A stretch of DNA of 64,000 nt from Styela clava. Lineage: Eukaryota. The stretch spans positions 19,902,001-19,966,000 of the forward strand of contig NC_135252.1 of assembly GCF_964204865.1 (NCBI RefSeq), written 5' to 3'. The notes under the pieces were generated by a model that did no database searches, had not been told where the DNA came from, and saw only the letters and a program-made list of their open reading frames with translations. The position numbers were made by a program, and so were the translations under genes. Positions 1-53,973 of the stretch are shown here, piece by piece (position 1 is the stretch's first letter; every line of letters starts with the position of its first letter).

Positions 1-7338
<7,338 letters not shown>

Positions 7339-9074: not shown

Positions 9075-9522
9075 CCGTATTTCCCGACGAATAAGTCTAC
9101 CCGGTCAATAAGACGAGGCCCGTTTTTAAGCCTGAAAAAATGGGTTTTTGCATATATCCTTCCAATAAGTTGGGGTAGTAAAATCGCATCAAAATCGTTA
9201 TCTAAAATTTCCATGCAATGCCTTTTAGGCGGTCGCCGCGTTTGCGCATTGGTTAAAATAGCCCATAATGACGTTTTCTTGTAGCGTAATATTCAATTCA
9301 TAATAACTAAGGAAATTCAAACTGTCTTTAAATTTTAATACAATTGTGTTCAACTCGCATTTGCGTCCACCATAAAAGAACATTACCTAATACATAGTAA
9401 GGCGACACAAAAAATCATATATCATATACTCGCCTAATAAGACGAACCCCTCCCCCCCCCCAAAAAAAAATCGTGCCAAAAATTTGGGTATAGAAAAGCG
9501 ACTTATTCGCCGGGGAATACGG
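9075..9522. mobile_element. pogo/Tigger-like MITE with TA TSD
   Basis: TA|CCGTATTTCCCGACGAATAAGTC ... GACTTATTCGCCGGGGAATACGG|TA. The paralogous empty site at ~22389-22407 (gttacaaataTAtgttgcc) has a single TA. Confidence 0.85.
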
Positions 9523-11068: not shown

Positions 11069-11104
11069 TTAAGATGTACCGAGGTCGATTCCTATGGCTT
11101 GCAT
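11069..11104 (-). pseudogene. HSP70 exon-1 stub (MQAIGIDLGTS*), a third, truncated copy
   Basis: Minus strand ATG CAA GCC ATA GGA ATC GAC CTC GGT ACA TCT TAA. Upstream sequence matches that of copy A; downstream sequence is unrelated to the HSP70 intron. Confidence 0.85.
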
Positions 11105-11266
11105 TGGATAACTACGATAATTTATTAAAGTAAAAAAATCAGGTGAAAAACATTCAATCAACTATTAAAGTTGGTAAGATTTTTTAAATTAATGGCGACT
11201 GATACATTATCTACAAAATATGAGTAAGTTAAATAAATATTGTTTGTCAAAAGCTTTGTCCAAAAT

Positions 11267-11362
11267 AAATGAAAATGTGAATAAATTAAAAATTAGCTTT
11301 TGTTTTTGGATTTGAAAATGAAAATGTGAATAAATTAAAATTAGCTTTTGTTTTTGGATTTT
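11267..11362. repeat. 49-bp tandem duplication
   Basis: aaatgaaaatgtgaataaattaaaaattagcttttgtttttggattt occurs twice; the paralog at ~7490-7545 has one copy. Confidence 0.8.
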
Positions 11363-12937
11363 TACCACTCCAATATTTAATTTTTAATTCAGACAGTTTA
11401 AACTTCTAGTTCAAAATAAATATTGTTATATTTCATACACTTCAGCACGTTCTGATAGTGTTTCTCTTGAACAAAACTTAATTTTTTTTTCTCATGCTAT
11501 ATTTGCTTATGGAGTTTTTTTATACGCTACGGAGTTGAGGAAACTTTAAGAAAATCGGGAGAAATACTCACACACTTTGATATACCTGATAACATTTAAT
11601 TTAACTACAAAAGACGAATTACTCGAAATATCAGTTAAAAAACAAAATATAGTTTTCACCTTTGTTATATAACACGCAGTATTATATTTATGATTTGATT
11701 TTAGAAATGAGCATCAACAAATTATCATACAATGACTCCATGGTTATTTTGGTTATTGATCTTATGACATTCGTTATTCGCTTCGCACAAGCTAGATATT
11801 AGGGCAGTGGTGTTTAACCTTTGTGAACCTGCCGAACCCCTACGTTATTCTGCAAGCTTCCACCGAACCCCAACAATACGTCCGCTAGTTAAAATTATTC
11901 GGCCTAATACGTATCAATTAGCTTTCACAAGAATACGGTCAGCTTTAAATGGATGCAACGTTTCAGCCGTTTTGTATCTTGAAACGACCACGATCATTGT
12001 TGCGTGAACCCTAGATACCATTACACTGTGTCAAAAAAAACATCGTTACGCCACAATGGCGTTGACGAAAAGATGTTTTAGTTGTAGAAGTTGTACACTG
12101 TTAAAAAAATTTTCCCAAATTTACTAAAAAAAAATGGCAGCAAAAGTACGGGCCCCATGTAAAAAAAATTACGAGCCCTATCAGTAGTATTATGAACAGT
12201 ATTTTCAGTAAATTTACAGAGATTGATGGTAGCAAAAATTACTATAAAACTGTAAAAAATACTACTTTTTTGACGGCAGTAAACCTACCCACCAGTAGTA
12301 ATATTTTTTACCTTAAAATAGTAAATAAAATTACTATCTCGATGGCAGCTACCTTACCCGACAGTAGTACCATACAATACTAGCATGATGGTAATTTCTC
12401 ACTCGCGATGACCGAACCACTACGAGAGTAGCAAAGATCTACTGGCACGACACAACAGTAAACACACAGAATATTACAGTTAAAATAAAAAAAACGAGAT
12501 TCTGGAAACGAAAATCATTTTATTACAATTAATATTTTTAGCATAAATACACACTGAATGCCTTTAAGGCTTGTAAAAAACAGTTTCGAAAGAAATTTCA
12601 TCAAATTGCCTCAGTACTGATACAAGTACATTGTATGTGTAAAGCTACACACAATAATAACCCAGTATTGTAAGACTCACAGATAACTCACATATTTTTT
12701 AACCTGGTGGAAATAAGTGTGGCTTATTCACTGAAAAAACTTTGTCATCCCTGCTATCTGGCATATTCCATTTTCAAGTTTTCTCTTCTAGATTTGAGCT
12801 TTTTTGTGACTTTGAGCAAAAATAGGCATGCAATGAAAAAAAATAAAAAAAAGCTTAATGGAATCAGATTCGGAAAAATTCGATTCGAAAAAAAATGTAT
12901 CCGGAAGTGGCAACCCTAGCAGTAACACCACCAAAGT

Positions 12938-15900
12938 TTACTTAATTTCTAACAACGGCACATATAACGCCTGTGATAGATTCACTCTTCTTGCAAGGCC
13001 GATTACTTTTGCATTAACGTCTTTGCCTTTACTTTTTTTCGACTTAGTGCCGCTGGGGTTTATGTCACCGAAGAACCTGAAAAAAGGCAGAACTTAAATG
13101 GCGAATAGGTTTCACATATGAAATTTGGAAAACGTCCTGTTATCTCACCACCAAAATAGTAAAAACACAAACACTGGACAAAAATAGTAAAAATGTCAGG
13201 TATTTATAATGTATCGTGCCTTGCCAAGGGATAAACAAAAAACTGTCAGTGGGCCAGGAATGCAATTGCCAAACCAGAAAGCTACAGATCCTCCTAGCCC
13301 CCAGTTGTCGCAAATCGCAATAGGCTCATCCGCTCGTTGACATTCGATTGCAAATGCAGCAATTGAAAAATATTGTATTAATTTCTGTCATTAGTAATGA
13401 TTTTTTGCAAATATATCAAAAATTTCCTGCTACAAAATGGAGAGCACAGTGACATCGTTTTAAATTGAAGTTCACTAAAATAGGATTGTTGTGAGTTCAT
13501 TTTTCACATATGAATGTAAAACATATTAGATTAGGAGGAAACATGTAAACATGTGTGGTACCGCCAGTCAGTCATGATTTATTTTAACCATTAATCGGTA
13601 CCGTACCGATGAATGGTTAAAATAAATCATGACTATTATTAAACACCCAAAAACTGTTTAACTAATTAAATTATTCTCAGCCCTACTCGTGGCCCAGTCC
13701 CCAGGGTATGGACACCACGAGTTTGTGCAAGTCCAGTCACATATTTCATTTTCACAACCCATTTTTTGTATTGTATGTCATCAAATAACACTACATGACA
13801 GAAGTAACAGGTAATTCATCAACAACGTGTACATTGTGCCAACAGCAAGAATTATATCAGCACTGTAGACTAGCACATTTTTTCTTACCTCTGAATAAAA
13901 TCAAACGTCAGCAAGGCCTTATTTGGATATTCTATGTTGAAAACATAGAACGAAGCAAACTGAAAAGCCACCGCTTCAAAAAACGATCTACAGGAACACA
14001 CCACTTCTCGTTCAGCGATGACGTAAAAAGTCTCAGCAGTCGCTACCGTGTTACCTGAAACACAAGATTGTAAACTTTAGCTTCGAATCTATAGGCTTAT
14101 GAATAAAGTGAAAGTCACTTGACAGGTTGATTAATCTTATTATCTCAACTTCTAAAGCCAACTAATAACAAATACACTTACTAGAGGTGGACGATTAGTG
14201 ATTTTTTGATAATATGCAATTACACAATTATTAATTGTATAATAGTACGATCATCTCAAAATTGGCTTTGGCTATATATTTAATATAGCAGACATGGATT
14301 TGTACTTATTTTCACTCACCGTTGATAGCGAGCGTAACACTGATAGAACGAAGGGAGAACTTATTATATTGATGAGGCTTATGATAAGCATTACGTTCTT
14401 TCAGAAATATTATATTTCATATTTCAAGCAATGCATACTGTGACGCAACAGTTAAAGCAGGTAGCATGACAGAAGCTGGTGATATCATTTTATAATAATC
14501 ACAACTGAGAAGTATATGGCGACACAAAATGGCCTTTGAAAAAGTTGCAGAATTAATCACAGGAAAACAGCTATCATATCATATTTCGAAATTGTTCCTG
14601 ATATTCACAATTACATCGCTCACCTCTTAACACTTACCTATGCAAGCAATAAATGGAGATTTTGGAATATCTTCTAATATCTGGGGAAAAGTGGTTTTTT
14701 TCTGAAAATAGGCAAAGTAGTGAATAAATATGCAAAAAAATTCCGTTAACCACTATCATGCAGTTAGTTTCCAATTAATTTGCAGTCGGCTCACAAAACT
14801 TTATACGAACAGTGTTGTGCACAAGTTACATTACTCTTGATGCGAAAACTTTCAAAAAAAGCATAGAACATACCTGGAAACACTTAAATATTTGGTTTAG
14901 GTCCTCTCCGAAATAATAGGCGATCAACAGGACCACCCCAGTCGATTTTGGTAATTCAGTTTTCAGATTCTTTGATTCCGATTTTGAAGAACTTATAAAT
15001 TCAGAAATTTTCTTATTGGTTGAACATTTCAATGTCCTAAATAATAATGCCTGAGTAAGTGATCCACTTTCTGATTGAATGACACTAAGTACTGGTAATT
15101 TCATAGAGGTTGGCTCATCGACCTTGCGATTAGTTACATAATTTGTTCCTATTGCAAGACTGAAGAGAGATGAAAGTAACATTAAATTACAGCCTGCTTG
15201 GAAAAGAAAGGGCAATTATTGTCAAGCAATTATTACACAGACATGGAAACAGACAACCTCTAGAGCACACTATGTCGCATGTGGTACCAGCCTGCAAGAA
15301 CAGGTGCACAATAACTAGGGTACTTGATTATGAAGTAAAATAAAGAATAGAAGAACTTCAGAATATTTAAGTATAGCCTAACCTCAGATAAGTTATAACC
15401 TCTTATAGGAAGCAATAAATAATGGGCACAAGAAGGCTTTCAACAAAAACTCTGCAAGGCATAGCATTCGAATGAAAATTATCTTGCAAAGTATCAGATA
15501 TTTGTGCAACTTACTTGTAAATGCATATGGAATTGTCTTCAAGTTTTTTTAAAATATTCTTTTTAGCTTCTGTTTTACCAACCAATGTTTCATAATGGCG
15601 CATTAAACAGATTCCATCGAACAAGTGTGGCCATAACTCCTTGATCCCACTGATGCTTTGATTTTGATTTATATGCTTTCGTTGAAGAGGGAAGGTCTGT
15701 TTCATATATTCTTCCACTTTTCCCAAATCCTGATCAGACTTTGATAATGTGTACTCATGCTTGAGCCACATTCTAAGTTGTTCAAGTTCCCCTTCATTAT
15801 CTGTTTCAGGACCCCAAAGCACACAGCCATATCTGTCAACATCTACTTGTTCTTCCACCTTAGGCTGTTGGCTTCTCTTCTTTGATGTGGACTTCCGCAA

Positions 15901-16449
15901 GTTGTCAATACGCCAAACCATTTGTTGGGTCAGGTAGGAATAGCCAGACCCAATGACTTCACCTTCAGGTCCACTTGTATCTTGGAAAGACTTTGGATAT
16001 CTACGTATGACCCTTTTAGCAATAGTCGACAATTCTGCCCTTGACGGCTTGGAACTGCCCGACCACTTCAGGACAGAGTCCACAAGAATGCGAACAAACT
16101 CACTTCTTCTGGCTGATGGAACAACTGTGCCATTTTTGCACATTTCAATTATGTCAGTGGGAAAGTCTTTCCAAGATATCACAAAGTTTTCTGCATTGCA
16201 AGATGAAGAGGAATCGCTGAATAGTTCAGTTGCATCGGATGAAATATCCAGACATAGACTATCTTTCCAGTATGCAACAATTTTCCGGGCCAATATGACA
16301 GACACCACACCATAGAGGTCTTCCTCTTTAATAAGCAAGAGATCAGAAGAATCTTCGACGCCAAGGTCTCTTAATCTCACATCCAGGTCTTGTATTGCTT
16401 GGTTATTCAAACCAATTTTAGACAGTTCATTCAAATTTATATTAGCCAT
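12938..16449 (-). CDS. Transposon accessory protein, 488 aa, with N-terminal SAM-like fold and SAMD3-like C-terminal domain (5 exons)
   Basis: Exons 16449-15515, 15036-14874, 14701-14638, 14054-13889, 13076-12938; all GT-AG, total 1467 nt, no stops. N-terminus LRDLGVEDSSDLLLIKEEDL..VILARKI is SAM-like; IKELWPHLF and FASFYVFNIEYPNKALLTFDFIQR..INP resemble SAMD3-like proteins from memory. Confidence 0.85.
13570..13634. repeat. 65-bp near-perfect palindrome in intron 4 of the accessory gene
   Basis: agtcatgatttattttaaccatt-a-atcggtac-c-gtaccgat-g-aatggttaaaataaatcatgact: 23-bp plus 8-bp arms, one mismatch, 1-nt loop. Confidence 0.9.
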
Positions 16450-17171
16450 TACTAAAATCTTCAGCAGTGCCAGCGAGAACTAAAACATTTATTGAAATCA
16501 CAGCCAAAAATAAAAAATAAATTTTCAAAAAATAAACCTGTCAATGTAATCACTACTTTCCTATATTTATTTACTTTCCTATATAAACCTAGGCAATGGG
16601 AAGGGCCAAAAATGTTGAACAGGTTAACGGTACAATTAACCAATTTTATGTACTCAAGGGTTACAATTCTTCCGAGCATAAGTCACTGAAAACAAATTTA
16701 GCAATAGAACTAACAGACGCAAAAAAACGCAATACTTCATATTTTCATCCATGTTATTATGTCCAACTAAACCATGCTTTATTTTATTTTTTCAGTATAA
16801 CAAAACCTGTTAGAGGATCTAGTACTGTCAAAAAGACTCGAAAAGATCTCTAATAACTATTACGTAAAATTGGAACCAAATCGAGGTAACAGTGGTGTTT
16901 GACTACGTTAGGGGTGGGCAATTGTTAGGGCTTGCCAGTCACATAGTTAATTTGAATTTGGTACCGGTATAAAATTAAAAACCAACAATTATCAGACAAA
17001 TAAATCAAAAACAGTATCCAAACATATCAATCAGCAAGTGAATTATGTTCGGCTAAAATATCAATGTTCAACTCATATTACTTTCTACTTGTAAACCAAA
17101 TCCAGTCAGATGTGACATAATGACATCAAAGTGATAATCAAATTTTTTAGTTTTAAGACCTTTCCAATGAT

Positions 17172-19628
17172 TCAATACAATGAAATAGAATGCTTCAAAA
17201 CAATGAAACTCCTGTCTGATACATTATAAGAATAAAGTGGGTAATATGAAAGTAGATTTTCAAAACTCAGGACAGCGAGCACTGAAGATTCAGGTTGCAC
17301 AACATGATAAACTCCAAGCCATGGAAAATGAACAGCAACATGCATTTCAACCAGAACAAACTGACTGCTCTCATACTCAAACAACAAGACAACTTTGCCG
17401 ACACTTAGGTCAGATTCCATTCTCTTTATGACTAAAAATTGGCCAAGTTCATATGTTGTCCCTTTAATAACAATTTCCCTCCAGACTCTTACTTTGTTTA
17501 TAGTTATATCAGCTAACGAAAGTGCATCGAGTATTTCATTAGAAAAAACACATGGAGAATTTGACTCAATCTTGTTACAAACATCTGGTTGAACTGTGGA
17601 GGTTTCATACAAATAGGCTTGAAACATTTGGTGACTATTAGCGAGAGTCAAACTAACATTAATAAAATTTCCAGTATATCTAATTACTTGTTTGAAATAA
17701 GAGTGTTTGCTTTCAAAACGAAGCGTCCACAGATGAATAAGTGGGCCAAACTTCAATGTCAGCCAGGGATAGTGAGTCATATAATGGTGCTTGGGCCTCA
17801 AAGGCACATCGAAACAACTTGATCTCAAATTAATATAATCTTTAATAGCCCCAGAAAGAAGACTCACTTCATATTTTGAAATACATGGCGAACAAAGCAA
17901 TTCGGTAACAAAACGCAAAAGCAAAAGGGCGCGCCAGACCTCATCATCAAAGTTTTTAACCTTATTCAATACAAAAAGAGGAAACAGTCTGATGAAACTC
18001 CAGTTCTGGCTTGCATTACCTGTCAATTTATCAGACCCCCTTTTCAAAGGTATTGGTTTTGATGCATTAATAACTTTGTCATAAGAAAAGGTCAATATTT
18101 GGTTATTCAAATAATCTAATGTGAACCATGATCTAGCTATGAAATACTTGATGAAAAGTACAACATCATATTGTACCACACCCTCAAAAAGATCGTGTGC
18201 AATGCAAGGGGGTAAACCAGGATTGCACACATGATAGAAATTCAATTCATTGAAGACCGAGTTAAATTTAACACCTTCGGCACTACAGTCACTGTCATTA
18301 CAGGAATCAACAGATAGATCATATAGATGTTTATCTCGTACTGGCATATGATTTTCAGAAAAGAAATCTTTACGAGTGGCCATGCAATATCTACATGGAC
18401 TATGTTTGCCACTAAAATTTGTCATGAAGCCACCTACCCAATGACTTCCCAAATTGTCACCAGTAATAGCAACAACGATTCCGCGAACTTTATATGCCAA
18501 TCCTAACCCCACATCTATGCCGTCTTCCTCTAAAAGTTTCAAATCCTTGATAAGGGGTCCAAATAAGGTTCCCATGTTAGCATCAGTTACAAATGTCTGT
18601 TTACATAATAAAACAAGTTGTATGGGATTAATCTTTGAACGACGATGAGGACGCATATTCGCAAGCGTAAAATACACAGCAAATATTTTGTGCTTGCATC
18701 TTCCTGAACCCAATGGATTTACGACTTCAAATGCATCTTGATAAAGTATCAATTTCAGAATTATATCATTGGACTGACATAAAACATTGTGTCTACATGC
18801 CTCGCCATCAACAACATCTTTAAGTACGTCTGGACAGGTTACAGGAGGGTTGAGAACATCGACCGCAACATCTTCATTACTCAAAAGTGCCTTTATGGAA
18901 CTCAAAACAGGAACATACTGGAAAGACGCAAATTCATTTGGAGAAGTGCTATTCTGGCTAATTACGTAGGAGACAGGTGCAATATACTTCATGTTTTTCT
19001 TGAAGTATATATCACGCATATAAATAGATCGCAAATTCCCATTCTTGAAAATATCAGCTATATTGAAGATAGCATTTTTCCCACAAATCTCAGAGAGTAC
19101 GGTTTCCACAATGTTCCCATCCAAATAATTTTCGAGGGCTGTTCGAATTGAATTCTTTAAAGGACGTTGTAGCACTTCACACAAATCTTTTAGACAAGAG
19201 AATATATTATCCACTGTAGATGCTGGTATTAGATGTTTGTATTGGAGAGATAGACAGATGAGTCCTATAACTTTCTCTACTTCTTCTGTATGAGGGATGC
19301 TTTCGGGAATCTTTGAGCTGGCCAAATCTTTCTCATCTACTTCTATAACATCCATCTGGGTACTGCTATGACCAAAAGAATCGTTTGGAATATTATCGCT
19401 CTCAAGTCCTTGGGAGCTACGATAGTAGCTATGATAACGGGAGATGTGAGACGTGAAGGAGGACAGTATGTGATAGATTCTTCCACATGGAGTGAAAGGG
19501 CACATCACATGGTGGCCACATCTAATGTGGTATTTTAGATGCTTAATTGTATCAACCGAATTATTGAAATGCTTTCCACATGATTGTAGTGGGCACTTCA
19601 AGTCGAACTGAATATCCATGTTTTCCAT
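17172..19628 (-). CDS. EnSpm/CACTA-type DDE transposase with N-terminal C2H2 zinc fingers (~818 aa from first ATG; open frame extends to 19676)
   Basis: Two C2H2 fingers (CPLQSC..HLKYH, CPFTPC..HISRYH). Catalytic-region motifs LILYQDAFEVVNPLG (D), ITGDNLGSH (D), CRYC, CIAHDLFEGV, PKHHYMTHY, LWTLRFESKH (E) match the CMC signature. Intronless and uninterrupted. Confidence 0.92.
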   Translation of the reverse strand: MENMDIQFDLKCPLQSCGKHFNNSVDTIKHLKYHIRCGHHVMCPFTPCGRIYHILSSFTSHISRYHSYYRSSQGLESDNIPNDSFGHSSTQMDVIEVDEKDLASSKIPESIPHTEEVEKVIGLICLSLQYKHLIPASTVDNIFSCLKDLCEVLQRPLKNSIRTALENYLDGNIVETVLSEICGKNAIFNIADIFKNGNLRSIYMRDIYFKKNMKYIAPVSYVISQNSTSPNEFASFQYVPVLSSIKALLSNEDVAVDVLNPPVTCPDVLKDVVDGEACRHNVLCQSNDIILKLILYQDAFEVVNPLGSGRCKHKIFAVYFTLANMRPHRRSKINPIQLVLLCKQTFVTDANMGTLFGPLIKDLKLLEEDGIDVGLGLAYKVRGIVVAITGDNLGSHWVGGFMTNFSGKHSPCRYCMATRKDFFSENHMPVRDKHLYDLSVDSCNDSDCSAEGVKFNSVFNELNFYHVCNPGLPPCIAHDLFEGVVQYDVVLFIKYFIARSWFTLDYLNNQILTFSYDKVINASKPIPLKRGSDKLTGNASQNWSFIRLFPLFVLNKVKNFDDEVWRALLLLRFVTELLCSPCISKYEVSLLSGAIKDYINLRSSCFDVPLRPKHHYMTHYPWLTLKFGPLIHLWTLRFESKHSYFKQVIRYTGNFINVSLTLANSHQMFQAYLYETSTVQPDVCNKIESNSPCVFSNEILDALSLADITINKVRVWREIVIKGTTYELGQFLVIKRMESDLSVGKVVLLFEYESSQFVLVEMHVAVHFPWLGVYHVVQPESSVLAVLSFENLLSYYPLYSYNVSDRSFIVLKHSISLY

Positions 19629-20499
19629 AATACAGTACTGGTAGTACCACTTTAGATAAGAAAATGGAAGAATCACAATGAAGAGCTGCTTTTGTCAGAA
19701 AATATAATATTATAGTACCACGAGCACTTCTGCAACATGTAATCATTTTTGGTATAACATTTATTACATGGTCACCACTTGACTTTTATTGGTTTCGTTT
19801 AAATGAACCAAAATAATCCGCAGTATTTTTTGACAAAATTATATTTTTCCAAAAACAAATAATCCTTTTTTTAAACCATCACCTCAACAATAGCGAATTT
19901 AGTTTCAGTCATTTCAATTTATTATTTTCCGTTGTTACAATTATTCGTACTTTAGGATCGGTCCCCCATATTGTAAGATTTTCATGAATCAAATATGAAA
20001 TGACTAAAATCGATCTGGTTCATTTTGAGCTCTCGAATCGAGATTCGAAATGACGTCATTTTACTGTGAAGAAATAAAATGTCCTAACAGTATTAGGATA
20101 TGTATATAATACAGTGTAAAGCGCCAAATACGTTCCGACCAAGATGGCCGCCTTGTAGACTTTGTAGCTATAATTGAATTCATCTGTCTGTTACCGGTAC
20201 CGTACCTATTGTTGCCACCGACTTGTAACGTTTGAACGTATCACATCACCATAGGCTACCGGTAAGTTACATCTATTCCGAAACAAATACTGAAATAGCC
20301 AATTCAGATTTTTACTCTTGGTCGTCGATAGATACTGGTGCCGGTAACACGGCGAAACTAACGCAGTGTGTAAGCATGTCGCTGTATACAGGTACGGTAC
20401 CATTAGATGCTGATGTACACGGTATTTAAAGAATATTTTGGTCTACCAACTACAAGTCTACTACTGTAACACAAACATGCTCAATTAACGCATGAAAAG

Positions 20500-20560
20500 C
20501 TACAAAAACCAACCGCCTAAAATAAACATCTACAAAAACCAACCGCCTAAAATAAACATC
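20500..20560. repeat. 30-bp tandem duplication
   Basis: ctacaaaaaccaaccgcctaaaataaacat x2. Confidence 0.9.
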
Positions 20561-21273
20561 CACTACGGTAACGACAAAGAGCCTCGCTTACCGAGTCCTA
20601 ATTCCTAAACCAGAAAAAGCGCGGGCTACAGGCACGTGACATTTGAGTGATGTCATAATTGGCACATTACCGGTACCAAATGACCTGTGACGGTAAAGAG
20701 AAGGATTAAATATAGGAAACTTTGTTCTCTGCAAAAAGTACCAGTACCGGTACCTCAATAATCAGACCACTACCCGTGGTAAATCCGCACCTACCGTACA
20801 GACCGTTGCTAACACAATCATCAAACTCAGACTCAAGCTATTGCATACTTAACATGCGTACCGCATTCAGTTTTCATACGCACGCAACCGATGCTGAGCT
20901 CCCAAGCAGCTTAGCGTCCCAGCCGAGATGCGCGGCACAAGGAAACTCGAAATCAAAAATGCTGCGCACGCAACCTGCCCCGTGGAGTTTTTGCGGATGA
21001 ATATTTGGACAAATAGGTCCGCTTACTTCCGGAAAAATAAGATATAAAACAATATCTTATCTTGTCTAATGCAATAGCAAAACAATCAGAATTTTTGGGT
21101 GATGAACCAAAATAATTCTAGAATAAAATTAATTCAAATTAATTTGATACCCAGAGCAAAATTTAGATGAAATTTTAAAGTATTTAAATTTGCTTCGTGA
21201 CTATATCGCATGCGTAGGTAGATAAATTCGTTCATTGGAAAGAATAGTTACTCGTAAATTGGAGGAATTTTTT

Positions 21274-21419
21274 TACTTTTTCCAAGTATACAAATCTTTT
21301 TACTATTTTTCTGTTATATTAATTACTAACTGATCAGTGAAATTACTACTTTTTCCAAGTATACAAATCTTTTTACTATTTTTCTGTTATATTAATTACT
21401 AACTGATCAGTGAAATTAC
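21274..21419. repeat. Perfect 73-bp tandem duplication in the CACTA subterminal region
   Basis: tactttttccaagtatacaaatctttttactatttttctgttatattaattactaactgatcagtgaaattac at 21274 and 21347. Confidence 0.9.
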
Positions 21420-22455
21420 TATTCATTAGTAAACTATTTACAAACAAGCACCCTGATTGGCTTAGCTAAGCAAGTCACGTGATTTCAATAAAATACTCGA
21501 AAAATTAGTAAAAATTTACTAGAAAAATTAGTATATTTACTAATTTTTTTAACAGTGTACGGGTCAAAAAAACCTTCGAAAAATTGCAATTACCGAAGCT
21601 AAAAGATTTTTGATGGATTGAAAATGTTGATGGCTCAGTCCATTTGTCTATCAGCCTTCAAACTTCAAGATGTGGACAAAAGTATTTGCCCCTTCTTTTA
21701 TAGAAATAAACGAACGATAAAACCCATCAAATTTAGGTTGTCAAGAACGTGGGATGATAATTTTAAGCAACGCACTCTCATGTTGTATTCGTTGTTGAGA
21801 ATAACACGAATTAGACTATGACAGTCAATGGCAGGTTCACTATCACAAGAAATTTAAAAACTTGCAAATGCAAAAGCGTTTTACTATCTTTGAATCTATA
21901 TCCAACAAATAAAACTATGAATGAAGTTTAAAATGAGATTGTAAAATTGTTTAATTAGTACACTTTTCTACAACTCATTACAGATATGCTCAACTCGCGG
22001 AAGAATATCACCGTTTGAGCTTTTGTCAAAACACAATTCACTTTTTAGTGGATGGATACACAACCTTTTTTCTCGAACTACTTACTAATCAACACCCCGG
22101 ATTCAAAAACGATAAATTTTGAAGGGACTTCACCAGTTAAGTCATTACGGAGGCGCATATTTTTCTTCTCCTTCCAGAATTTATTTTTTTATTAATGACC
22201 TACTGATACGTCTACTCTTGTGGCCTAAATACGCCATCGTGCCACGTTAGATATAATGGGCTGGGTATTTACTTCAATTACCACAAAATGCACGTAACTT
22301 TAACGCGTTCCCTATTCGTCGTTGTCTTGCCTTCGATATTCATCACGCGATTTATTGTTTCATGTCCGACTTGCAAACACTTATTGATGTTACAAATATA
22401 TGTTGCCTTGACATGGTACAAGAAACCCAATTGTTATATTTTATTTGTACGACAA

Positions 22456-46238: not shown

Positions 46239-49200
46239 CTGTAAATCATTCAGGAGCATTTTGTTTTACATTTTTATTGTGTCTTTATTAATGTCTTGTT
46301 TTATATATTTAATGAGTTGAAAATGTATAGAGTTAATCAAATGTATAAAGTTGGTCAAATTAATTCCATGATCTAAAGTATCATTCAAAAATTTTGTAAA
46401 TAAAAATTAAAAAAAATTAAAGCAATGTGTTTCCCGCTTTGAATTTTTGTTAATGATTGTAAAATATTGACAATGATATTTAGGTAGATAGTACAAACAA
46501 AGGACACCTATAGCAAGGCGGGATTAAAATGTCATTGGGGATCATATAATCCGTCAGTATACCAGTTGCTAGTTTTTTATCTGTCTGCGCCATTTTCTGA
46601 TTTCACCGAGATTTGAGTCACAAAATTTACGTAAAACAAGATTATTACATTTTTTTATTGAAATTTTGACTTGTTATGGATCAGAAATATTACACGGAAT
46701 GTACGTTGTTATAAAAATAACTTAATCTCTACGGCATTTTATTAATTCTTTACATTAATCATAAATAAATATTCTGACAACATATCTATTTTGGATCTTG
46801 ATTATTCAAGACTATTTGTTGTTAGTTAATTAAGATACGCCCTTGTTATGAAGCACCAAATCATTAATGAACTATTACGTATACTCTGATCATAAATGAC
46901 ACGCCATTTTGTTTTATATACTAAAAAGCTCACGTAACATATTTTTGAAAAGCATTAGAAACAATTAATATATTTTTACTTTATTTTTTGTAAATTAGTA
47001 TTCTGTTTGAATTTTGATGATGCATTAATGATACCGTAGCTTACGACAGTGGCTTGTTTTACATTTCATCAATTTATCTTTGCATTGAGTTATTCAATAA
47101 CTAAATATATCACTTACAATGTAGATTTTTTTGTTTTGTTTTAGAAGAACGTGTTTTATTGTTTAAAGATTTGGTTTGATGTGTTGCTTCATGCAGGCAT
47201 ATCGCTATTCTCTGTTATCGAAATAAATTTACCAGGTCAATGAGTCATAAGAGATGAGAGATTATTATGGTGTCGTATTTCATAGCTCAATAAATTATTG
47301 TTGTGTTTGTAAGATATCACGGAAAGCAGGTGTATATGATTAAGAATCGAATTACAGCAATTCAAGATAAACTTCCAAGAAGAGTACATTTGTTTCGTTC
47401 CCGACTAAACATTTGATTCGCAAGATGTAGGTTGTGCAGTGACCATAAATAAGTCATTGGCATTTTCATGCTTTGAAATTTTCAATTTAATTCTGCTTCA
47501 ATGATTTAAAACATTGGCACAGAATTTTGCTAATTATTGCATATTAAATTATCTAGGTGTAAGAAGAGGCTTGATAACTTGCGTTAATTTGTTATTACTT
47601 CCGATATATATTCGCTGATTTTCATTCAATACATGAATAAAAAAAAATGTAAATTGAACTGAAAATTTCGTAAATTTATTCTCATGAGAGTGAGAATCGC
47701 AATCATCTATTTTCAAGTAAACAAATTTCCTATCAAGTAAATGGCCAAGTTAGCAGTCGTGGGGAAAAGATGCAGTGGCATTAACAAGTATTTACCTAGC
47801 TTTTACCAGATTCTGTTTGATGCGATATGGACAGGAGAAATAAACATTAAACTACTAACCGAATTCTTTAGTAACGTATCCGCATATTTGGTTTATATCT
47901 AGACCTTATTTTGGTTTTACTAAAGGTTGTGAAAATGTCAAAGATATGAGATATGATTTCTCGAAATTCAAAACGAACAAACATACTTTGACCATATTGA
48001 ATTTCATTTATTTTGCGCCCTCATATATAGCAACCATAAGTGACGCCGCTCAATATTGTATGATGAAAATTTTGGACTACACTTTCTAAATTAAAAAAAA
48101 TATATATCCCAATACTATGTGCTCTGTCTTAAACTATAGAGTTTTCTGAGTTTTTGTTCATCTGATAATCCAGCAGAAAGCCAGAATAAGCTTAATCCCG
48201 CCACTTCGGCAGATTTAGTCATTTATTTAATTTGATGCATTCCAACATTGAAGACGGACTAACGAGAGACGATAAAACTTGCTTGCTGAGACCATTGCCC
48301 AGATAGGTTTACGCATTCTACAAAGTATTAAAAAAATCGTTTATACGGTGGATCCCGTGTTTGATTCAAGAATAGGATCATTACCTGCGAGAGGATTGCT
48401 GTACTGCGCAATTCCCGTTATTACTAATATGATCCTACTTTTGTCTAAATCCATAAATACGTGTTGCTGTATACATTTTCGGTGCGCTAGGTAACTAGAT
48501 TACTCGGTGCGCCATTGTCAGACACTAGTAGCAGGCAGAAGGTCCCTGTTTGTTTACGAAACTAATAGGTTTTTAGTTTTCCATTCCTCCAAAACATCCA
48601 CCCTAAATATACGTTTAAAAATCACACTCGATTTTTTGCATAATATATTTAGGTAACTTCAGGGGAGAAATTCCGTTTAATATGAGAAAATGTAATTCTG
48701 GTTAATATATAAATTCATCCATCCAGTTTGTCTCCACCATCTTTAAGCCCCTAAAATATAAATATCATAATTTAAACATTGTTATATAAAAGTAATAAAT
48801 TTATAGATAAAGTAATTAGCAATAGATAATTAGATAAGTAACACGAAATGAACGGAAAAGATTATATCATACCATTGCCTTCTTTGCACATAGGCTTATA
48901 TAAGTTTAGACAAGTGTATCTGTGTTTTCTAGTTAATTTGATTAATAATCTTAAAATTATTTAAACTATTTCAATGGAGTACATTTAAAAAATTTAAATT
49001 GTGGAGTTGATAATACCTAATGTAGCCCACACGATTTTGTAAGATAAGAATTAAAGTTACACCCATGATGCTGTATTAGGGCAAATTGCATATTTCATCT
49101 CCTAATTTGAAATATATTTTTTCGTATGCCGAATCCGATTGAAATTATACCCAATAAAATCAATTTACATTTGATGAGTAATATAAGTGTTTTTCTTATT

Positions 49201-50057
49201 ATTCTGTCAATTAAATTTATTTTAATGTTATTAATTAAGGCTTAGAAAATAGGAAAAATTTTGCGTTTAGGCAAAAAAATTATTTTTTTTGAATTATTGA
49301 GTTCTTGGTATCTGTAAACGTCAAATAAGCGCAGTGTTTTTTATCATAAAATTTATGTTATTATTATGAACCAATATTGAAATATTATCTGAGAGTCAGA
49401 TCCGGAGTAGAAATCGGACTCAAGTATTGGCTTTTTTATGGTTTGAATCGGAGTCGTATCGACAAACGCTCCAGTGTCGGAACTCGAGGTCGGTGTCAGA
49501 ATTTTATATTTTTCAAAGTCCAGGACAGGTCAAAAAAACAGTTTAAAAATCTCTACAGTACTCAATAGGCATCAACTTGACTTGGCATTCTTAACAGTAT
49601 ATTAAAGTATAGGCTTGCGTAATCAAAATTTTTGTCATCAAAATTTTCTCGGAGTTCGAAGTCGTGGTCAAAATTTTTTACAAGTCGGGAGTTTCAGACT
49701 AAAGTGAATTTTTCCCGACTTAACTTACGCACCTGACCAGTGAGTTGTATAAAACGCTACAGGAAACATTTCTGGGAAAAACAACAATAACCTTTGATAC
49801 GATTACGGCTCCCTCCACTATCAAGTCCAGGAATTTGAAATAAATACCTGGCTAAGTAATCCCATACTCGACATGAATTGGTAACCGAACGAGAGGCCGT
49901 TGTTCGCCCTATAAAGAAAACATCTTATCGGCTTCCCTTCTCCCCCGGAATGAATATGTAAATCATATCCTATTTACTACAAATATATTCTCAAGTTGGA
50001 ATGCTTGAATAGACAAAAAAAATAAAATATTAATAATATAATATTGATCCTACTCTT

Positions 50058-51302
50058 TTATTGTGCGTCTCGCATGTCCGCTTCGAAAGCTTTCACGAAG
50101 TCTTCCAGCTCAGCAAGGTCCTGTGTATAAAAATCACGATTGAACGATAGCTTGTCGAATTATTGATAACGTCGACACAAGTACAGTTTATTTTATAACC
50201 ATGGTCAGATCAATTAAATTCCTAAAACAAATTTTGCTAGACACCTATTATGGGGTTTTTAGTCATCAAACATTTCTTTATGCAACTCCAAGTTACTTTT
50301 TTGAAAGTTTTTTTGTTTTCATGGCTCGTGATTCCACATATTCGATATCATGACTACAACTTAACATTTTGATAAGAGTTAGTGTTGACACTTTCCACAT
50401 TAATTCGTTTTCAATTAACAATATTTTTTGTCAAAGGATGGCTGATTCAGATTATGCTTTTATACTATTGTAGTATCATTTACAAAGTTGAGTCTTGTTT
50501 TTGCTGAGAATAAATTATACTTAAAACACATAAATTATCATAAGATATTAAAAGGCAATAGTGCAAATTTACCGCGTCTCCGTAAGATGTTAAGCGCCCA
50601 TGTAGGATTCCCCTGTGTAGTATAAAAATATTTTTTATTAAATCAATCAAAAGATTAATGTAGTACAACTCAACAATTTTTCATTCATTGATAATTCATG
50701 GATGCCTAGTTGTGAAACACTAATCAGAATAAAATAGGAATACCACAAACGACGCTGCAAAGACAGTAATTAATTGTTTAAGGTAGTGTGGTTGTTTATG
50801 ATTTATTTTTGTATGTTGCACAGGTTAGAGAAACACAGGTTAGTAATAAATTATCTGCTATTAATATTCTTGTAATATTTCAGCACAATTATCTATAAAC
50901 AGTTTTTATTATAAACAATTTCTTAATGTATTCATATTTGTTTTTTATCACTAATTTAAAGGCATTCAATTATTTCAAAACACTACATTGCCATTTTTAT
51001 TTATAAACAAGTTTTGACTGAAAAACGGATTATTTATTATGTTTCACCTTTCCAATTTTCCCATGTTTAAATGTACATATGTTTTGATTGGAATGAAACA
51101 AAAAAATAATTTTTTTGAATAAATCTTACCATAGTTTCCAATACAGGTTGATGATGTAGTTTGAGTATGTATGGAGGGTAGTAGCATAACTGTTGAACGG
51201 GGATAGCATTGAGAGCAGGGAATTTGTTGTGTAATAGTATGCACCGTGACACTGCTGTGCCAGAAGCACAACAAGAATCGCTAAAGCTGCGTTGACTTTC
51301 AT
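50058..51302 (-). CDS. 91-aa secreted prepropeptide with styelin-like architecture (signal peptide, Tyr/Trp-rich core, G, acidic C-terminal extension)
   Basis: Coding exons 51302-51130, 50612-50573, 50120-50058 (GT-AG, 276 nt) give MKVNAALAILVVLLAQQCHG|AYYYTTNSLLSMLSPFNSYATTLHTYSNYIINLYWKLWGILHGRLTSY|GDADLAELEDFVKAFEADMRDAQ*. An acceptor lies 1 nt before the ATG, a candidate non-coding exon ends at donor GTAAGT (~51782), and AATAAA overlaps the stop. Confidence 0.8.
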
Positions 51303-53973
51303 TCTGTAATGTAAGATTGAAATCAAGTTAAAAGAGACAAATATGGAATTAAAATCCCTAATTTTCAAAATAAGATGGAAGTGTTATTAGATAAGCAGAT
51401 TCAACACCGATCGTTCGACGATACTATATTTTTAACGTTGATTATGGCAGTTTCCTAAATAAACGTTGTTGTTTTTTAAACCGTCAGAAAAATAAGCGTA
51501 TTAAAAAAATTATAAACAACATTCACTATCAAGACATAATATAAACTTTAAAAAGTCTGAAATTTTATTCTCTAAAATACCAAAATATATTGAATACTCT
51601 TACTCTTAATGAGTTTTGTTGGATGCTCACGTGACTCAGGTGGGTAAAATGTAAAGATATTTTCTTCCTGATAATATTGATTTCTCATTCATTTTATATT
51701 TATTTTATACTCCTAAACATTTTCCTAACCAAATATATTAGATTCAAAATTGAAAATTAACTAAACCCTCAAAATGACTTACGTCTTCCACTGTCAACTT
51801 CCGAATCTGAGATAATCTCTCCACAACGTTGCAAAGAATATGCCAGAATTGTGTGCAGTGTTAACCAATTTAAAATAAATTTTTCTATAAAATGGTTTTT
51901 AAAAAAAAGGTTTCGTATTACAAAATGTTTTAGTATAATTTAACCTTGGTACAAACGTGACTGGCTTTGACAATACTACTGAAATACCATAAAACATGTG
52001 TGGACCTCATTGTTTGACTGGAACGTAAATTTTAAAATTCAGCAATTGTGAGTAAAACGTGTTACAATACGTTGTGCTACTTTCAGGATGTAATTATATT
52101 TTTATGTCAAATTCATGACAGCAATTTCCTACTTTTTAAAAATATGTGGAAGACCCGATAGAATTTTGCAACAGTTTTTTTTCAATTTCACTTGATAACG
52201 AGCTATTTAGAAAATAATACAATAACAGCCACACTAATGATCTATTCAATTCATGCAGCGACCCTCATCCAAAATAGTCGTAATCTCACTAATCATGGTG
52301 TCTAGAAATAATGAATGAATGCATTGAAAACTGATTTCTCCATATGGATGGTTTTCAATAACTTCGTCAGGATTAATATGAGCATAGATGAGTTCTGAAC
52401 ATTAAAGCTCATGGAAACTTCCGTGGTATAAGTTATTTTTGATTGACAGGTAATTTAACTTTCAACGTAACATTTCGACATACTAGGACCAGTAATATTG
52501 CGTACATTTTGTCTCATTCAATTTGCGGGGCATTAGGCCAATTTCTTTTTAGTTCTTTATTTAATATATGAAACAAATCAAATGCAATTCCTGAACAAAC
52601 CGTATGTAAATTTTCAAACGAAAAACCTGTAAAGTATCACAACAGTTTTCAGTGAAAAGGCATCGAATAAAATACAAAATACCAAATGCTACATTATTTC
52701 GAAACTTTCAAATTCATATTGTGGTTAACTTATTTTTGCAGTAAGCAATTGGTTGCTGAATATTATAAAAAACAAACTATAGATAATGTAAAGATAAATC
52801 TCTTCAAATTCCATACTGGTAAGTGGTAATTTAATTAACTTCTCAGTGGCAGACAGCGTATGTTATTGCCAAAATAATACTTTGACAGTTGAAATAAGGT
52901 TCATGACTATAAATTTTCAAACATACAGTGCTTTCCAAAATTTAACGGTCAACAAACAGAGGAACCATCTTTCAATTTATCCTATATTTAATTTGATTCT
53001 GCGTTTTATTTGGTCGTTTAATTTCACATTAGCCGAAATATTGTTGTGACATGTAATTGAATGGTTTCGACAAATATTTTACCACGATTGGTGTACAACA
53101 CGAGCGATTTTATGACATGTAAAATTAAAAATTATTTTAGGACTGACATGTTGTGATATTTTTGCTTCGTAAAAATAATCCATTTTTCTAAAAAATACAT
53201 CAATCAACATTTCAATAATTTTATTGTTTCCCTGTCATTTCAAAATTAATTTGAAAATCACAGACCTCTCAAACCACATACTGCTTTGAAATTAAGTATA
53301 CTTTGTAATTTGCAATGAAACTTAAGCTTTTTCAAAACATGTTGTTGAAATGTAACTTCAAAAGTATGAATACAAATTCAATATTTGTATTTAACATTGA
53401 ATAATATTTTTACTTATTTATTGAATCACATTTAACTAGTGCTGCCCGCTAGATGGTGCTGGATTTCAAATATTCGATTGTTGATTAAAATATATATACT
53501 GTATTCAATGTAGCATATAGTAATTACATAATTAAATTCAAAACTTAGTAATTTTGTTGATTTCTGCAAAAAAATTCGTTATCATAAAGCAAAAATGCTC
53601 TTTTGTTAAACTTTGAAATTTGGATCTCATTTACTCGTAGTTACTAAACAGTAACGTTTATTTTAAGTCCATCTTGATATCAAATTATGTCAATTATAAA
53701 GCTCGTAATATATCAAACAGGATATATTTCAGATTAGAAATATGACTTCAACTGTCAGATATTACAAATTTCCCCCATTTTTTTAAAAGAGCGATAAAAT
53801 ATGTGACATATTTTCTGTAATGATAAGATATAGGTTAACCACATAAATTATTGTTATCATTTTCCATCTATTATTCGACACAGAGTGGACATACAGATAT
53901 TGTTGTCAGTATGTTGTTGTTGTTAGACTTTTTGTTGTTGTTTTTCGCTAGAAGGATTTTGCTTTTATTTTTA

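What the first reader, a model, noticed from the sequence alone, without database searches (positions are those of the whole stretch)
50058..51302. Hidden styelin-type prepropeptide with a Tyr/Trp-rich, non-cationic core: candidate precursor of a new DOPA-peptide/tunichrome-like product
Seen: a cleanly spliced 91-aa ORF with a 20-aa signal peptide ending QQCHG. It is followed by a 48-aa core with 8 Tyr, 2 Trp, only one K and one R and no D/E, starting AYYY and ending ..HGRLTSY. Then come G and an acidic tail DADLAELEDFVKAFEADMRDAQ (8 D/E). Established: Styela styelin/clavanin precursors have signal, mature peptide, amidating Gly and a polyanionic extension. From memory, styelins have a ..QQSEA signal end and a GDMTDEEFQEF.. 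tail, close in pattern to GDADLAELEDF. Ascidian blood-cell peptides carry DOPA and bromo-Trp, and tunichromes/plicatamide are Tyr-derived peptides with a C-terminal dehydro-DOPA. Inference: the styelin precursor chassis here carries a different cargo, a Tyr-rich catechol peptide for tunic cross-linking, metal binding or defence. The YYY and C-terminal Y-G are candidate sites for DOPA/TOPA conversion, amidation or oxidative decarboxylation.
Basis: partly seen in the sequence, partly recalled or inferred. Interest (0 to 1): 0.8.

Follow-up and report, generated by a model that had tools for sequence, protein, structure and literature searches.

The report
Tyrosine-rich styelin-like peptide gene
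A real, spliced and abundantly transcribed gene of the sea squirt Styela clava, seemingly missing from protein databases, encodes a small secreted peptide laid out like the animal's styelin antimicrobial-peptide precursors but with a tyrosine-rich core that has almost no positive charge; its function is untested.

Summary
The minus-strand model gives a 91-codon ORF, and all three predicted splice junctions occur in cDNA-like public runs but not in a DNA run. A fourth intron lies 4 nt after the stop codon. The genome is Styela clava.

The only detectable relative is RefSeq's "uncharacterized protein LOC120343417", 3.7 Mb away on the same chromosome. Exon 1 is 45% identical, the exon boundaries are the same, and both have Tyr-Gly-Asp before the tail. 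That paralogue's core is cationic (9 K+R). Ours has 2 K+R, 8 Tyr and no Asp/Glu.

Membership of the curated styelin family (Pfam PF17562) fails, and a 1.84-billion-protein profile search found no styelin. I located the real styelin-C gene, and it shares the gene layout:
- an intron just before the ATG;
- a phase-2 intron inside the core;
- a phase-0 intron exactly two codons after the amidating Gly;
- an acidic helical tail exon.

So this is a distant, de-charged variant built on a styelin-like precursor plan. DOPA conversion, amidation, cross-linking and tunichrome roles remain untested inference.

The scan had already noted about a dozen styelin-like families elsewhere in this genome, but not this gene or its paralogue.

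The parts
51783..51855 (-). 5'UTR exon. The 3' end at 51783 is exact. The 5' end is approximate, with a TATA-like 'tatagaaaa' about 30 nt upstream.
   Evidence: joint 51303/51783 in X1 (depth 6221) and X1 coverage in bins 51701-51874; donor GT at 51782-51781. There is no ATG in this exon.
51304..51782 (-). Intron in the 5'UTR (479 nt). It ends 1 nt before the ATG.
51130..51303 (-). First coding exon. ATG at 51302. It encodes the signal peptide and 37 residues of the core, and ends with TG of a split Trp codon (intron phase 2).
   Evidence: There is an A at -3 of the ATG.
51243..51302 (-). Predicted 20-residue signal peptide (MK, a hydrophobic run, then QQCHG). Cleavage is predicted before AYYY.
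   Evidence: One search aligns own residues 14-23 with styelin 16-25, which places the cut opposite the known styelin cut (A22|G23). No SignalP run was available.
50613..51129 (-). Intron 1 (517 nt, phase 2).
   Evidence: joint in X1, X2 and X9.
50573..50612 (-). Coding exon 2 (40 nt). It holds the third base of the Trp codon, then GILHGRLTSY, then Gly, Asp, Ala. It ends in phase 0.
50579..50581 (-). Gly codon after the C-terminal Tyr of the core. It is the candidate amidation donor and lies two codons before the phase-0 intron, as in styelin-C and LOC120343417.
50121..50572 (-). Intron 2 (452 nt, phase 0).
   Evidence: joint in X1, X2 and X9.
50054..50120 (-). Coding exon 3. It encodes the acidic amphipathic tail DLAELEDFVKAFEADMRDAQ, the stop TAA at 50060-50058, and 4 nt of 3'UTR.
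   Evidence: helical moment 0.58.
48751..50053 (-). 3'UTR intron (1303 nt, GT..AG). It sits where the paralogue and the neighbouring styelin-like genes have their phase-1 intron 3.
   Evidence: loose end at 50053 in X9, and 30 unplaced letters in X1 record 5; exact match at 48721-48749; acceptor 'ttttag'.
48660..48750 (-). Last (3'UTR) exon. Only 48749-48721 is backed by a contig. ATTAAA lies at 48681-48676. The 3' end is approximate.

Best explanation
This is a five-exon gene of Styela clava on the minus strand, at G000 C3:19,950,7xx-19,953,8xx. It is abundantly transcribed and apparently absent from protein databases. It encodes a 91-residue secreted prepropeptide.

Shown:
- The mRNA and all four of its splice junctions.
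- Clear paralogy with RefSeq LOC120343417.
- The layout: signal, 48-residue core, Gly, acidic tail.
- The gene plan, which is the same as that of the true styelin genes and of neighbouring styelin-like genes.

Inferred:
- It descends from the styelin-like precursor superfamily.
- Its core is a de-charged version of a cationic helical peptide. Lys/Arg in the paralogue are Tyr/Ser/Thr/His here.
- It is cut by signal peptidase after Gly20.
- It is processed at Tyr-Gly|Asp as styelins are, giving a 48-residue peptide with a C-terminal Tyr-amide.
- It is stored in blood-cell granules, where styelin-type peptides have Tyr converted to DOPA.

My best guess at the mechanism is a helical, aromatic, catechol-bearing peptide released on degranulation. 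It would act as a phenoloxidase substrate or cross-linker, or as a charge-independent membrane-active defence peptide. It would not act as a classical cationic antimicrobial peptide.
For: Real spliced mRNA:
- Three joints appear in X1, X2 and X9 and none in the DNA-like run X12.
- Exon word depth is in the thousands against 0-7 for introns.
- One X9 contig spans the 3'UTR exon and coding exons 3, 2 and 1.
- The locus is single-copy.

Species: Styela clava.

Paralogue P0001 (LOC120343417):
- 25 of 57 exon-1 residues are identical and colinear.
- The hits are reciprocal and the only ones in the genome.
- Exon 1 ends identically at LYWKL|W with 18/20 nt conserved across the donor.
- Exon 2 ends YGDA versus YGDE. 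The C-anchored shuffle test gives p=0.023.

Gene plan shared with styelin-C (L021, named), a poly-Arg array gene (L017) and a Trp-rich precursor gene (L020):
- An acceptor lies 0-9 nt before the ATG.
- A phase-2 intron lies in the core.
- A phase-0 intron lies at the core/tail boundary. In ours, P0001 and styelin-C it is exactly two codons after Gly-Asp.
- A phase-1 intron lies in the tail. Ours keeps it as a 3'UTR intron 4 nt after the stop.

Tail: exon-anchored similarity gives p=0.06 against styelin and p=0.019 against the array. The array against styelin gives p<5e-5. hhalign pairs EDFV with QEFM in register with the start of exon 3.

Location: the P0001 gene lies about 6.7 kb from the last gene of that array.

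Other points:
- Charge: own core K+R 2, D+E 0, Y 8. P0001 core K+R 9, D+E 2.
- Helix: single-sequence AlphaFold of exon 1 gives one helix over residues 3-56, pLDDT 85.
- Constraint: 0 variants in 276 coding nt against 12 in 969 intron nt across four runs. Poisson P is about 0.03.
- Literature: styelins have a 22-residue signal, a 31-32-residue peptide, a Gly amidation signal and a 26-residue pro-piece. Styelin D is amidated and carries four DOPA and a 6-bromo-Trp (PMC8659048).
Against: - No sequence method links it to styelins at a significant level. PF17562 finds nothing at E<=10. PF17562 hits only the three C10 styelin genes in this genome.
- The 1.84-billion-protein profile search returns only P0001 and a spurious repeat protein.
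- hhalign probability is 13% at best, and that alignment covers the signal peptide only.
- A signal-peptide profile of four styelin-like families finds 53 loci but not this gene or P0001. Direct scores are 2.2 and 8.1 bits.
- The tail shows no similarity to P0001's tail.
- The core is weakly amphipathic as a helix: maximum moment 0.42, against 0.70 for P0001 and 0.77 for styelin-C.
- Tissue or cell type, cleavage, amidation and DOPA are all untested. The run types are only guessed to be RNA and their names are coded.
- The 5'UTR introns of the comparison genes are read from the sequence context only.
Confidence: 0.55

Rival explanations
1. This gene and LOC120343417 form an independent two-gene family of small secreted helical peptides. 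The family only converges on the common 'signal, helix, acidic tail' design and has nothing to do with styelins. Its role would be unknown, for example a structural tunic peptide or a signalling peptide.
For: All sequence searches fail to connect it to styelins or to the 53-locus signal superfamily. The Atlas's only named neighbour of P0001 is fish pleurocidin-like precursors at 0.77, a chance-level score. That shows the design is widespread.
Against: Four intron positions and phases coincide, including the phase-0 intron exactly two codons after Gly-Asp. The weak alignments of the signal cut site and of the tail are in register with the exon boundaries. P0001 sits next to a styelin-related array, and P0001's 22-residue signal matches in register.
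Confidence: 0.25
2. It is a decaying or function-less offshoot of a cationic peptide gene. It is still transcribed from a strong promoter, but its de-charged product has no specific role.
For: Cationic residues have been lost and helical amphipathicity is lower. The tail is truncated by a stop 4 nt before an intron that is coding in the paralogue. No orthologue is known.
Against: The ORF, signal peptide, Kozak A at -3 and Gly-Asp site are intact. The steady-state signal is very high in two studies. There are no coding variants, against 12 intronic ones. Core motifs are conserved with the paralogue at 45% identity.
Confidence: 0.1
3. The precursor is cut into small catechol products of the tunichrome or plicatamide type, from the YYY run or from a C-terminal Tyr that is oxidatively decarboxylated.
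For: There is an AYYY N-terminus, and a C-terminal Tyr-Gly conserved in both paralogues. The literature proposes a ribosomal peptide origin for tunichromes via plicatamide (PMC3039461).
Against: There is no cleavage site after YYY. The paralogue has YKI at that place, so the run is not a conserved unit. The Gly after Tyr points to amidation, not decarboxylation. No chemistry data exist for S. clava here.
Confidence: 0.04
4. It is a non-coding transcript with a chance ORF.
For: The ORF is short and is not in any protein database.
Against: The ORF spans three exons in frame. It has a canonical signal peptide and is homologous at protein level to an annotated protein with the same exon phases.
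Confidence: 0.02

Closest known systems
Uncharacterized protein LOC120343417 / LOC120343416 of Styela clava (XP_039268522, XP_039268521; P0001, 100 aa)
   Same: It is the only detectable homologue. Exon 1 is 45% identical and colinear. The exon boundaries match (LYWKL|W and YGD-x|). The introns are phase 2, 0 and 1. It lies on the same chromosome. The core has a similar length (50 versus 48 residues), with conserved Pro-Phe and Tyr-Trp-Lys-Leu-Trp motifs and a C-terminal Tyr-Gly-Asp.
   Different: Its core is cationic (K+R 9, D+E 2, Tyr 4). Ours has K+R 2, D+E 0 and Tyr 8. Its tail is longer (27 aa over two exons) and not alignable with ours. It is annotated in RefSeq and ours apparently is not.
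Styelins C, D, E of Styela clava (Pfam PF17562; P0004-P0006)
   Same: Both have a signal peptide with a Gln-Gln-x-x-small cleavage region. The mature peptide follows the signal directly. Gly-Asp follows the mature peptide, then an acidic amphipathic pro-piece of 22-26 residues. Both have a 5'UTR intron just before the ATG, a phase-2 intron inside the mature peptide and a phase-0 intron two codons after the Gly.
   Different: There is no significant sequence similarity and no PF17562 match. Styelin mature peptides are 31-32 residues, cationic (K+R 5-8) and Phe-rich. Ours is 48 residues, nearly uncharged and Tyr-rich with one Phe. The genes are on a different chromosome (C10 versus C3).
Poly-Arg styelin-related gene array (C3:16.186-16.237 Mb) and botryllin-type genes (Botryllus botryllin, PMC9966394)
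   Same: The intron phases are the same (2, 0, 1). The acidic tail exon starts D-x-x-x-[FL]-[QE]-[ED]-F. They lie on the same chromosome. The paralogue lies about 6.7 kb from the end of the array.
   Different: Their signal peptides form a tight family (a profile finds 53 loci) that does not include ours. Their cores are extremely basic and their tails are much longer.
Plicatamide, tunichromes, ferreascidin and other ascidian DOPA/TOPA peptides (PMC3039461)
   Same: They are Tyr-derived chemistry in ascidian blood cells. A C-terminal aromatic residue is the site of modification.
   Different: No genes are known for these products, so no sequence comparison is possible. They are small (2-8 residues) or compositionally different. 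Nothing here shows catechol chemistry.

Membership tests
Styelin (Pfam PF17562) | Significant match to the curated family profile (cut-off 27 bits) | tested here: not met
   no hit at E<=10 for own exon 1, exon 3 or the paralogue. The control, styelin-C, scores 133.9 bits; the profile finds only three genes at C10:16.31-16.34 Mb in this genome.
Styelin (Pfam PF17562) | 22-residue signal followed directly by a 31-32-residue cationic, Phe-rich mature peptide | tested here: not met
   about 20-residue signal; 48-residue core with K+R 2, one Phe and eight Tyr.
Styelin (Pfam PF17562) | Gly amidation signal followed by an acidic C-terminal pro-piece of about 26 residues, with no dibasic site | tested here: met
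   Tyr-Gly-Asp, then 22 residues with 8 D/E. Compare P0004, whose tail starts GDM and has 10 D/E in 26 residues (PMC8659048).
Styelin (Pfam PF17562) | Gene structure: intron just upstream of the ATG, phase-2 intron in the mature peptide, phase-0 intron two codons after the Gly | tested here: met
   Own gene: (RNA-verified). Styelin-C gene L021: hand splice reproducing P0004.
Styelin (Pfam PF17562) | Blood-cell origin, heavy modification (DOPA, 6-bromo-Trp, hydroxylated Lys/Arg), C-terminal amide, antimicrobial activity | not testable with these tools
   Run names and tissues are coded. No peptide chemistry is available.
Styelin-like signal-peptide superfamily of S. clava (53 loci found with profile A4) | Conserved 22-residue signal, consensus MNSKxxILIxLVALLAIQxGxA | tested here: not met
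   neither this gene nor P0001 is among the 53 hits at E<=10. P0001 scores 8.1 bits (in register 1-22) and own exon 1 scores 2.2 bits.
LOC120343417-type peptide family (this gene plus one RefSeq gene) | Colinear similarity of signal and core, with identical exon boundaries | tested here: met
   reciprocal and only genome hits, E about 0.01 genome-wide; 25/57 identical; tblastn E of 2e-7 and 6e-7 in the local databases; same boundaries.
Tunichrome / plicatamide-type catechol peptides | Small peptide with DOPA/TOPA and a C-terminal decarboxy-dehydro-DOPA | not testable with these tools
   This needs mass spectrometry. Only the presence of Tyr residues is shown.

The most novel reading that the evidence does not exclude
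The styelin-like precursor machinery of ascidian blood cells also makes a non-cationic, poly-DOPA peptide with up to eight catechols on a 48-residue helix. The peptide would serve as the natural phenoloxidase substrate or cross-linker in clotting, tunic repair or metal binding. This would be the first gene-encoded precursor of an ascidian catechol peptide that is not an antimicrobial cation. It would give a genetic handle on the long-open question of where ascidian DOPA/TOPA peptides come from.
Probability: 0.12. Interest if true: 0.8.

Novelty: new variant of a known kind. Interest (0 to 1): 0.5.

Why it matters
Ascidian blood cells are known for heavily modified DOPA- and bromo-Trp-bearing peptides, yet only a few precursor genes (styelins, clavanins, botryllin) have been described. 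This gene shows that a styelin-like gene plan can carry a core that has given up positive charge for tyrosine while staying intact, constrained and very abundant as mRNA. If the Tyr residues become DOPA as in styelin D, the product would be a defined, gene-encoded catechol peptide. It could be tested directly by mass spectrometry, in situ hybridisation and a synthetic peptide with phenoloxidase. Even if not, it adds an apparently unannotated, highly expressed secreted-peptide gene and a two-gene family to the S. clava annotation.

Tried and rejected
- **Word-index search.** Own exon 1 found nothing. The paralogue's exon 1 found only its own RefSeq cluster.
- **Exhaustive profile search** of 1.84 billion representatives. 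It returned only P0001 and P0003. P0003 is a 727-aa artefactual repeat protein that scores through eight copies of a TQNILLSILAKFNSL-like stretch, and I rejected it as chance.
- **Pfam** on the exons and P0001: nothing.
- **PDB profile search**: best E 0.24 (ribosomal eS1), rejected.
- **Pleurocidin family PF08107** in the genome: below cut-off and unrelated loci.
- **ESM Atlas.** It was closed for new sequences. For P0001 it gave only a 0.77 pleurocidin-like lead and bacterial helical look-alikes, which I treated as noise.
- **BLASTP** of own exon 2 and exon 3 against P0001: no alignment.
- **MAFFT** of the separate exon pieces with P0001 misplaced the short pieces, so alignment A1 was discarded.
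- **Nucleotide comparison** of the gene with the P0001, styelin-C, array and L020 loci. Only the last 20 nt of exon 1 plus the donor are shared with P0001, and there is no conserved promoter or UTR.
- **Local scans.** tblastn and a signal-exon scan of 110 kb around the paralogue, and of the whole window, found no further family member.
- **Papers** did not print styelin precursor sequences. I therefore found the styelin-C gene with a back-translated seven-residue motif recalled for the styelin N-terminus. I then confirmed it by database name.
- **Joined protein.** All searches, alignments, counts and the fold were done exon by exon, so no search or fold of the full 91-residue product was made.
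Full report
**1. What is in the sequence**

On the minus strand an ATG at 51302 opens a frame that runs to a GT donor at 51129. One search translates this exon as MKVNAALAILVVLLAQQCHGAYYYTTNSLLSMLSPFNSYATTLHTYSNYIINLYWKL, followed by TG of a split codon.

After an AG at 50614-50613, a 40-nt exon (50612-50573) completes a Trp codon and reads GILHGRLTSYGDA (extended by one codon). After an AG at 50122-50121, the third coding exon reads DLAELEDFVKAFEADMRDAQ and stops at 50060-50058.

Counted piece by piece:
- The core between the predicted signal cut and the Gly has 48 residues: Y8, L8, T6, S6, N4, W2, H2, K1, R1 and no D/E.
- The 22 residues after the Gly contain 8 D/E and 2 K/R.

All searches, alignments, counts and the fold were done exon by exon.

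**2. Is it a real gene?**

Yes. I laid one DNA-like and three cDNA-like public runs on 49700-52300.
- The joints 50119/50572, 50611/51129 and 51303/51783 are all CT..AC on the plus strand, which is GT..AG for the gene. They appear in X1 (word depth 5,542-9,139) and in X9 (5,660 for the two coding joints). The two coding joints also appear in X2 at depth 3.4.
- None appears in X12, whose contigs cover exons and introns evenly at about 230-375.
- Exon bins read 2,000-19,000 in X1 and X9, against 0-7 in the introns. Depth from contigs is a poor measure of expression, but the contrast within a run is unambiguous.
- A single 304-nt X9 contig joins exon 1, exon 2 and exon 3. It then continues with 29 letters that match window 48721-48749 exactly. 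An acceptor 'ttttag' sits just upstream of that match, and an ATTAAA lies about 70 nt downstream in the transcript.

The gene therefore has a fourth intron (50053-48751), starting 4 nt after the stop codon, and five exons in all. The 5'UTR exon holds no ATG, and the start codon has an A at -3.

The locus is single-copy. Across the four runs there are 12 variant positions in 969 intron nt and none in 276 coding nt. The Poisson P is about 0.03, which is a mild sign of constraint.

**3. Whose genome, and is the gene known?**

The only other match to exon 1 in the 377-Mb assembly lies 3.7 Mb away on the same contig. Its exon 1 retrieved a RefSeq protein, 'uncharacterized protein LOC120343417 [Styela clava]' (P0001, 100 aa). 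My hand splice of that locus reproduces the RefSeq protein exactly.

The window's own product was not found by the word index. It was also not found by a profile search that read all 1.84 billion representatives. In that search, any protein containing exon 1 would have scored highly. It therefore seems to be missing from protein databases. I could not check whether RefSeq lists the locus as non-coding.

**4. The paralogue**

Exon 1 of the two genes aligns without internal gaps in the core: 25 of 57 residues are identical. The following features match:
- Exon 1 ends at the same codon split (LYWKL|W), with 18/20 nt conserved across the donor.
- Exon 2 ends YGDA in ours and YGDE in P0001, both in phase 0. 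The C-anchored shuffle test gives p=0.023.
- P0001's third intron is phase 1. Ours lies at the corresponding place (phase 1 if read through), now in the 3'UTR because a stop arose 4 nt upstream.

The conserved residues are inside the core: Y, TT, LLS, L, PF, T, S, LYWKLW, and the C-terminal Y-G-D.

The differences are largely about charge. P0001's K, R, R, R, R, K and E in the exon-1 part of the core are Y, S, S, T, H, Y and Y in ours. The net result is K+R 9 / D+E 2 for P0001 against K+R 2 / D+E 0 for ours.

The tails do not align. So, between the closest relatives, the scaffold of the core is kept and the charges are swapped.

**5. Relation to styelins: sequence tests**

The papers I read did not print precursor sequences. 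I therefore searched the genome with a back-translated seven-residue motif recalled for the styelin N-terminus. It gave one hit, at C10:16,341,789.

The open frame at that locus retrieved 'styelin-C', 'styelin-D-like' and 'styelin-C-like' of S. clava, all carrying Pfam PF17562. With these real sequences the tests are negative or weak:
- PF17562 scores styelin-C at 133.9 bits and gives nothing for our exons or P0001.
- In the genome, PF17562 finds only three genes on C10.
- hhalign of our family against the styelins aligns only signal residues 1-19 with 1-19 (P=0.002, probability 13%).
- Own exon 1 aligns LAQQCHGAYY with MIQQSEAGWF (P=0.03).
- Own exon 3 aligns EDFV with QEFM (P=0.1).
- A 26-position profile of the signal region of four styelin-like families finds 53 loci in clusters on C3, C10, C18, C4, C2 and elsewhere. 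It does not find our gene or P0001. Scored directly, they reach 2.2 and 8.1 bits.

By sequence, membership of the styelin family is not met.

**6. Relation to styelins: gene structure**

I compared four other genes:
- the styelin-C gene;
- a gene of the poly-Arg array at C3:16.19-16.24 Mb;
- a Trp-rich precursor gene 79 kb from ours;
- P0001.

All have an acceptor 0-9 nt before the ATG, a phase-2 intron inside the mature or core peptide, and a phase-0 intron at the boundary between core and acidic tail. All except styelin-C also have a phase-1 intron in the tail.

Our gene has all four positions, and ours are RNA-verified. In styelin-C, P0001 and our gene, the phase-0 intron falls exactly two codons after Gly-Asp: LGDM|, YGDE| and YGDA|.

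The weak alignments in section 5 are all in register with these boundaries. The signal alignment places our predicted cut (G20|A21) opposite the experimentally known styelin cut. EDFV/QEFM are residues 6-9 of exon 3 in both genes.

Exon-anchored, gapless shuffle tests give the following:
- own tail against styelin tail: p=0.06;
- own tail against the array tail: p=0.019;
- array tail against styelin tail: p<5e-5.

The P0001 gene lies about 6.7 kb from the last array gene, tail to tail.

I read this as a chain. Ours to P0001 is solid. P0001 to the styelin-like superfamily is moderate. The array to styelin is good. Overall I give about two chances in three that the gene descends from the styelin-like precursor stock. 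Convergence on a common peptide-precursor design is the main alternative.

**7. How it probably works**

Established for styelins (PMC8659048):
- The precursor is a 22-residue signal, a 31-32-residue peptide, a Gly amidation signal and a 26-residue pro-piece.
- Styelin D is C-terminally amidated and carries four DOPA, a 6-bromo-Trp and hydroxylated Lys/Arg.

By analogy (inference), our precursor would be handled as follows:
- It is cut after Gly20.
- It is processed at Tyr68-Gly69|Asp70.
- It is amidated on Tyr68.

That gives a 48-residue peptide of 5711.86 Da before other modifications.

Single-sequence AlphaFold makes exon 1 one continuous helix, with pLDDT 85 overall and above 90 over the LYWKL end. 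I take this as weak evidence only. Helical amphipathicity is lower than in P0001 or styelin-C: 0.42 against 0.70 and 0.77.

With almost no charge, the peptide cannot work as a classical cationic antimicrobial. If it passes through the same granules as styelins, its eight Tyr are candidate DOPA sites. In Botryllus, DOPA-bearing styelin-type peptides have been proposed as natural phenoloxidase substrates (PMC9966394).

My committed guess is a catechol-bearing aromatic helix that is released on degranulation. It would be oxidised to cross-link or generate reactive species, or it would insert into membranes through its aromatic face. I rate the processing at about 50%, DOPA at about 40%, and a tunichrome-type small product at under 5%.

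The YYY run is not conserved in the paralogue, which has YKI there, and no cleavage site follows it.

**8. Comparison and novelty**

The scan's earlier notes list about a dozen 'styelin-like' families in this same genome. I used them as leads. I re-derived the species name, the existence of the array and its tail similarity to styelin myself. None of those notes covers this gene or P0001.

The finding is therefore not a new kind of system. It is a new, apparently unannotated gene, and a small new family with an annotated but unnamed paralogue. It has an unusual property for this class: a non-cationic, tyrosine-rich core with very abundant mRNA.

**9. Limits**

- Run types are guesses and their names are coded, so tissue is unknown.
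- Only one read-laying run was allowed, so the transcript's 3' end and other species were not examined.
- No signal-peptide predictor was available.
- The full joined protein was not searched or folded, by instruction.

Noticed in passing
window 49787-50047 (inside the 3'UTR intron): This is a highly repeated element. Word depth in the DNA-like run X12 is 54,000-300,000 against about 300 for the flanks, with many contigs that run on into unrelated sequence. No tRNA was detected, and there is only one copy in the window. It is probably a dispersed SINE- or MITE-like repeat of S. clava.
   Followed up: partly
L020:3801-5428 (G000 C3:19,872,800-19,874,427, plus strand; about 79 kb from this gene, outside the window): Another small four-coding-exon gene for a secreted precursor. 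It has a styelin-like signal (MNSKVIVFIALVAMLAVDNTQG), a Trp/Lys-rich cationic core (WKWWKKAVKTAKKIW...) and a long acidic tail ending ...RSLLSQ. The intron phases are 2, 0 and 1. It is the top hit of the signal profile.
   Followed up: partly
G000, 53 loci listed (clusters on C3 7.75 and 16.14-16.22 Mb, C10 8.84-9.05 and 16.31-16.34 Mb, C18 11.39-11.46 Mb, C4 4.84-4.97 and 7.12 Mb, C2, C1, C13, C8): A 26-position profile of the styelin-type signal peptide retrieves 53 first exons genome-wide. This suggests a large superfamily of peptide precursors that share one signal peptide. Only some of these clusters seem to match the scan's earlier notes.
   Followed up: no
L017:3661-4603 and neighbours (G000 C3:16,185,549-16,236,4xx): The poly-Arg array genes (MNFKFLVLLLLVALLAIQHGDS then WGRRRRRGKKRRGW...) have a tail exon that starts DSDSFQEFLENAKDEF. 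Aligned gaplessly from the exon start, it matches styelin-C's TDEEFQEFMQDIEQAR with z=4.3.
   Followed up: partly
window 12096-21557 (ORFs 15511-16449 and 17172-19676, minus strand): These are the only two long ORFs in the window (312 and 834 aa). They lie in the stretch that another first-stage note calls a CACTA-type transposon with a partner protein. I did not examine them.
   Followed up: no
P0003 (727 aa, from the representative library): This protein is made of about ten near-identical 58-residue repeats (…DLTQNILLSILAKFNSLDV…FADISGFTNL…), which look like an adenylyl-cyclase-like fragment repeated. It scored against our profile only through repetition. It is probably an assembly or gene-call artefact.
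   Followed up: no
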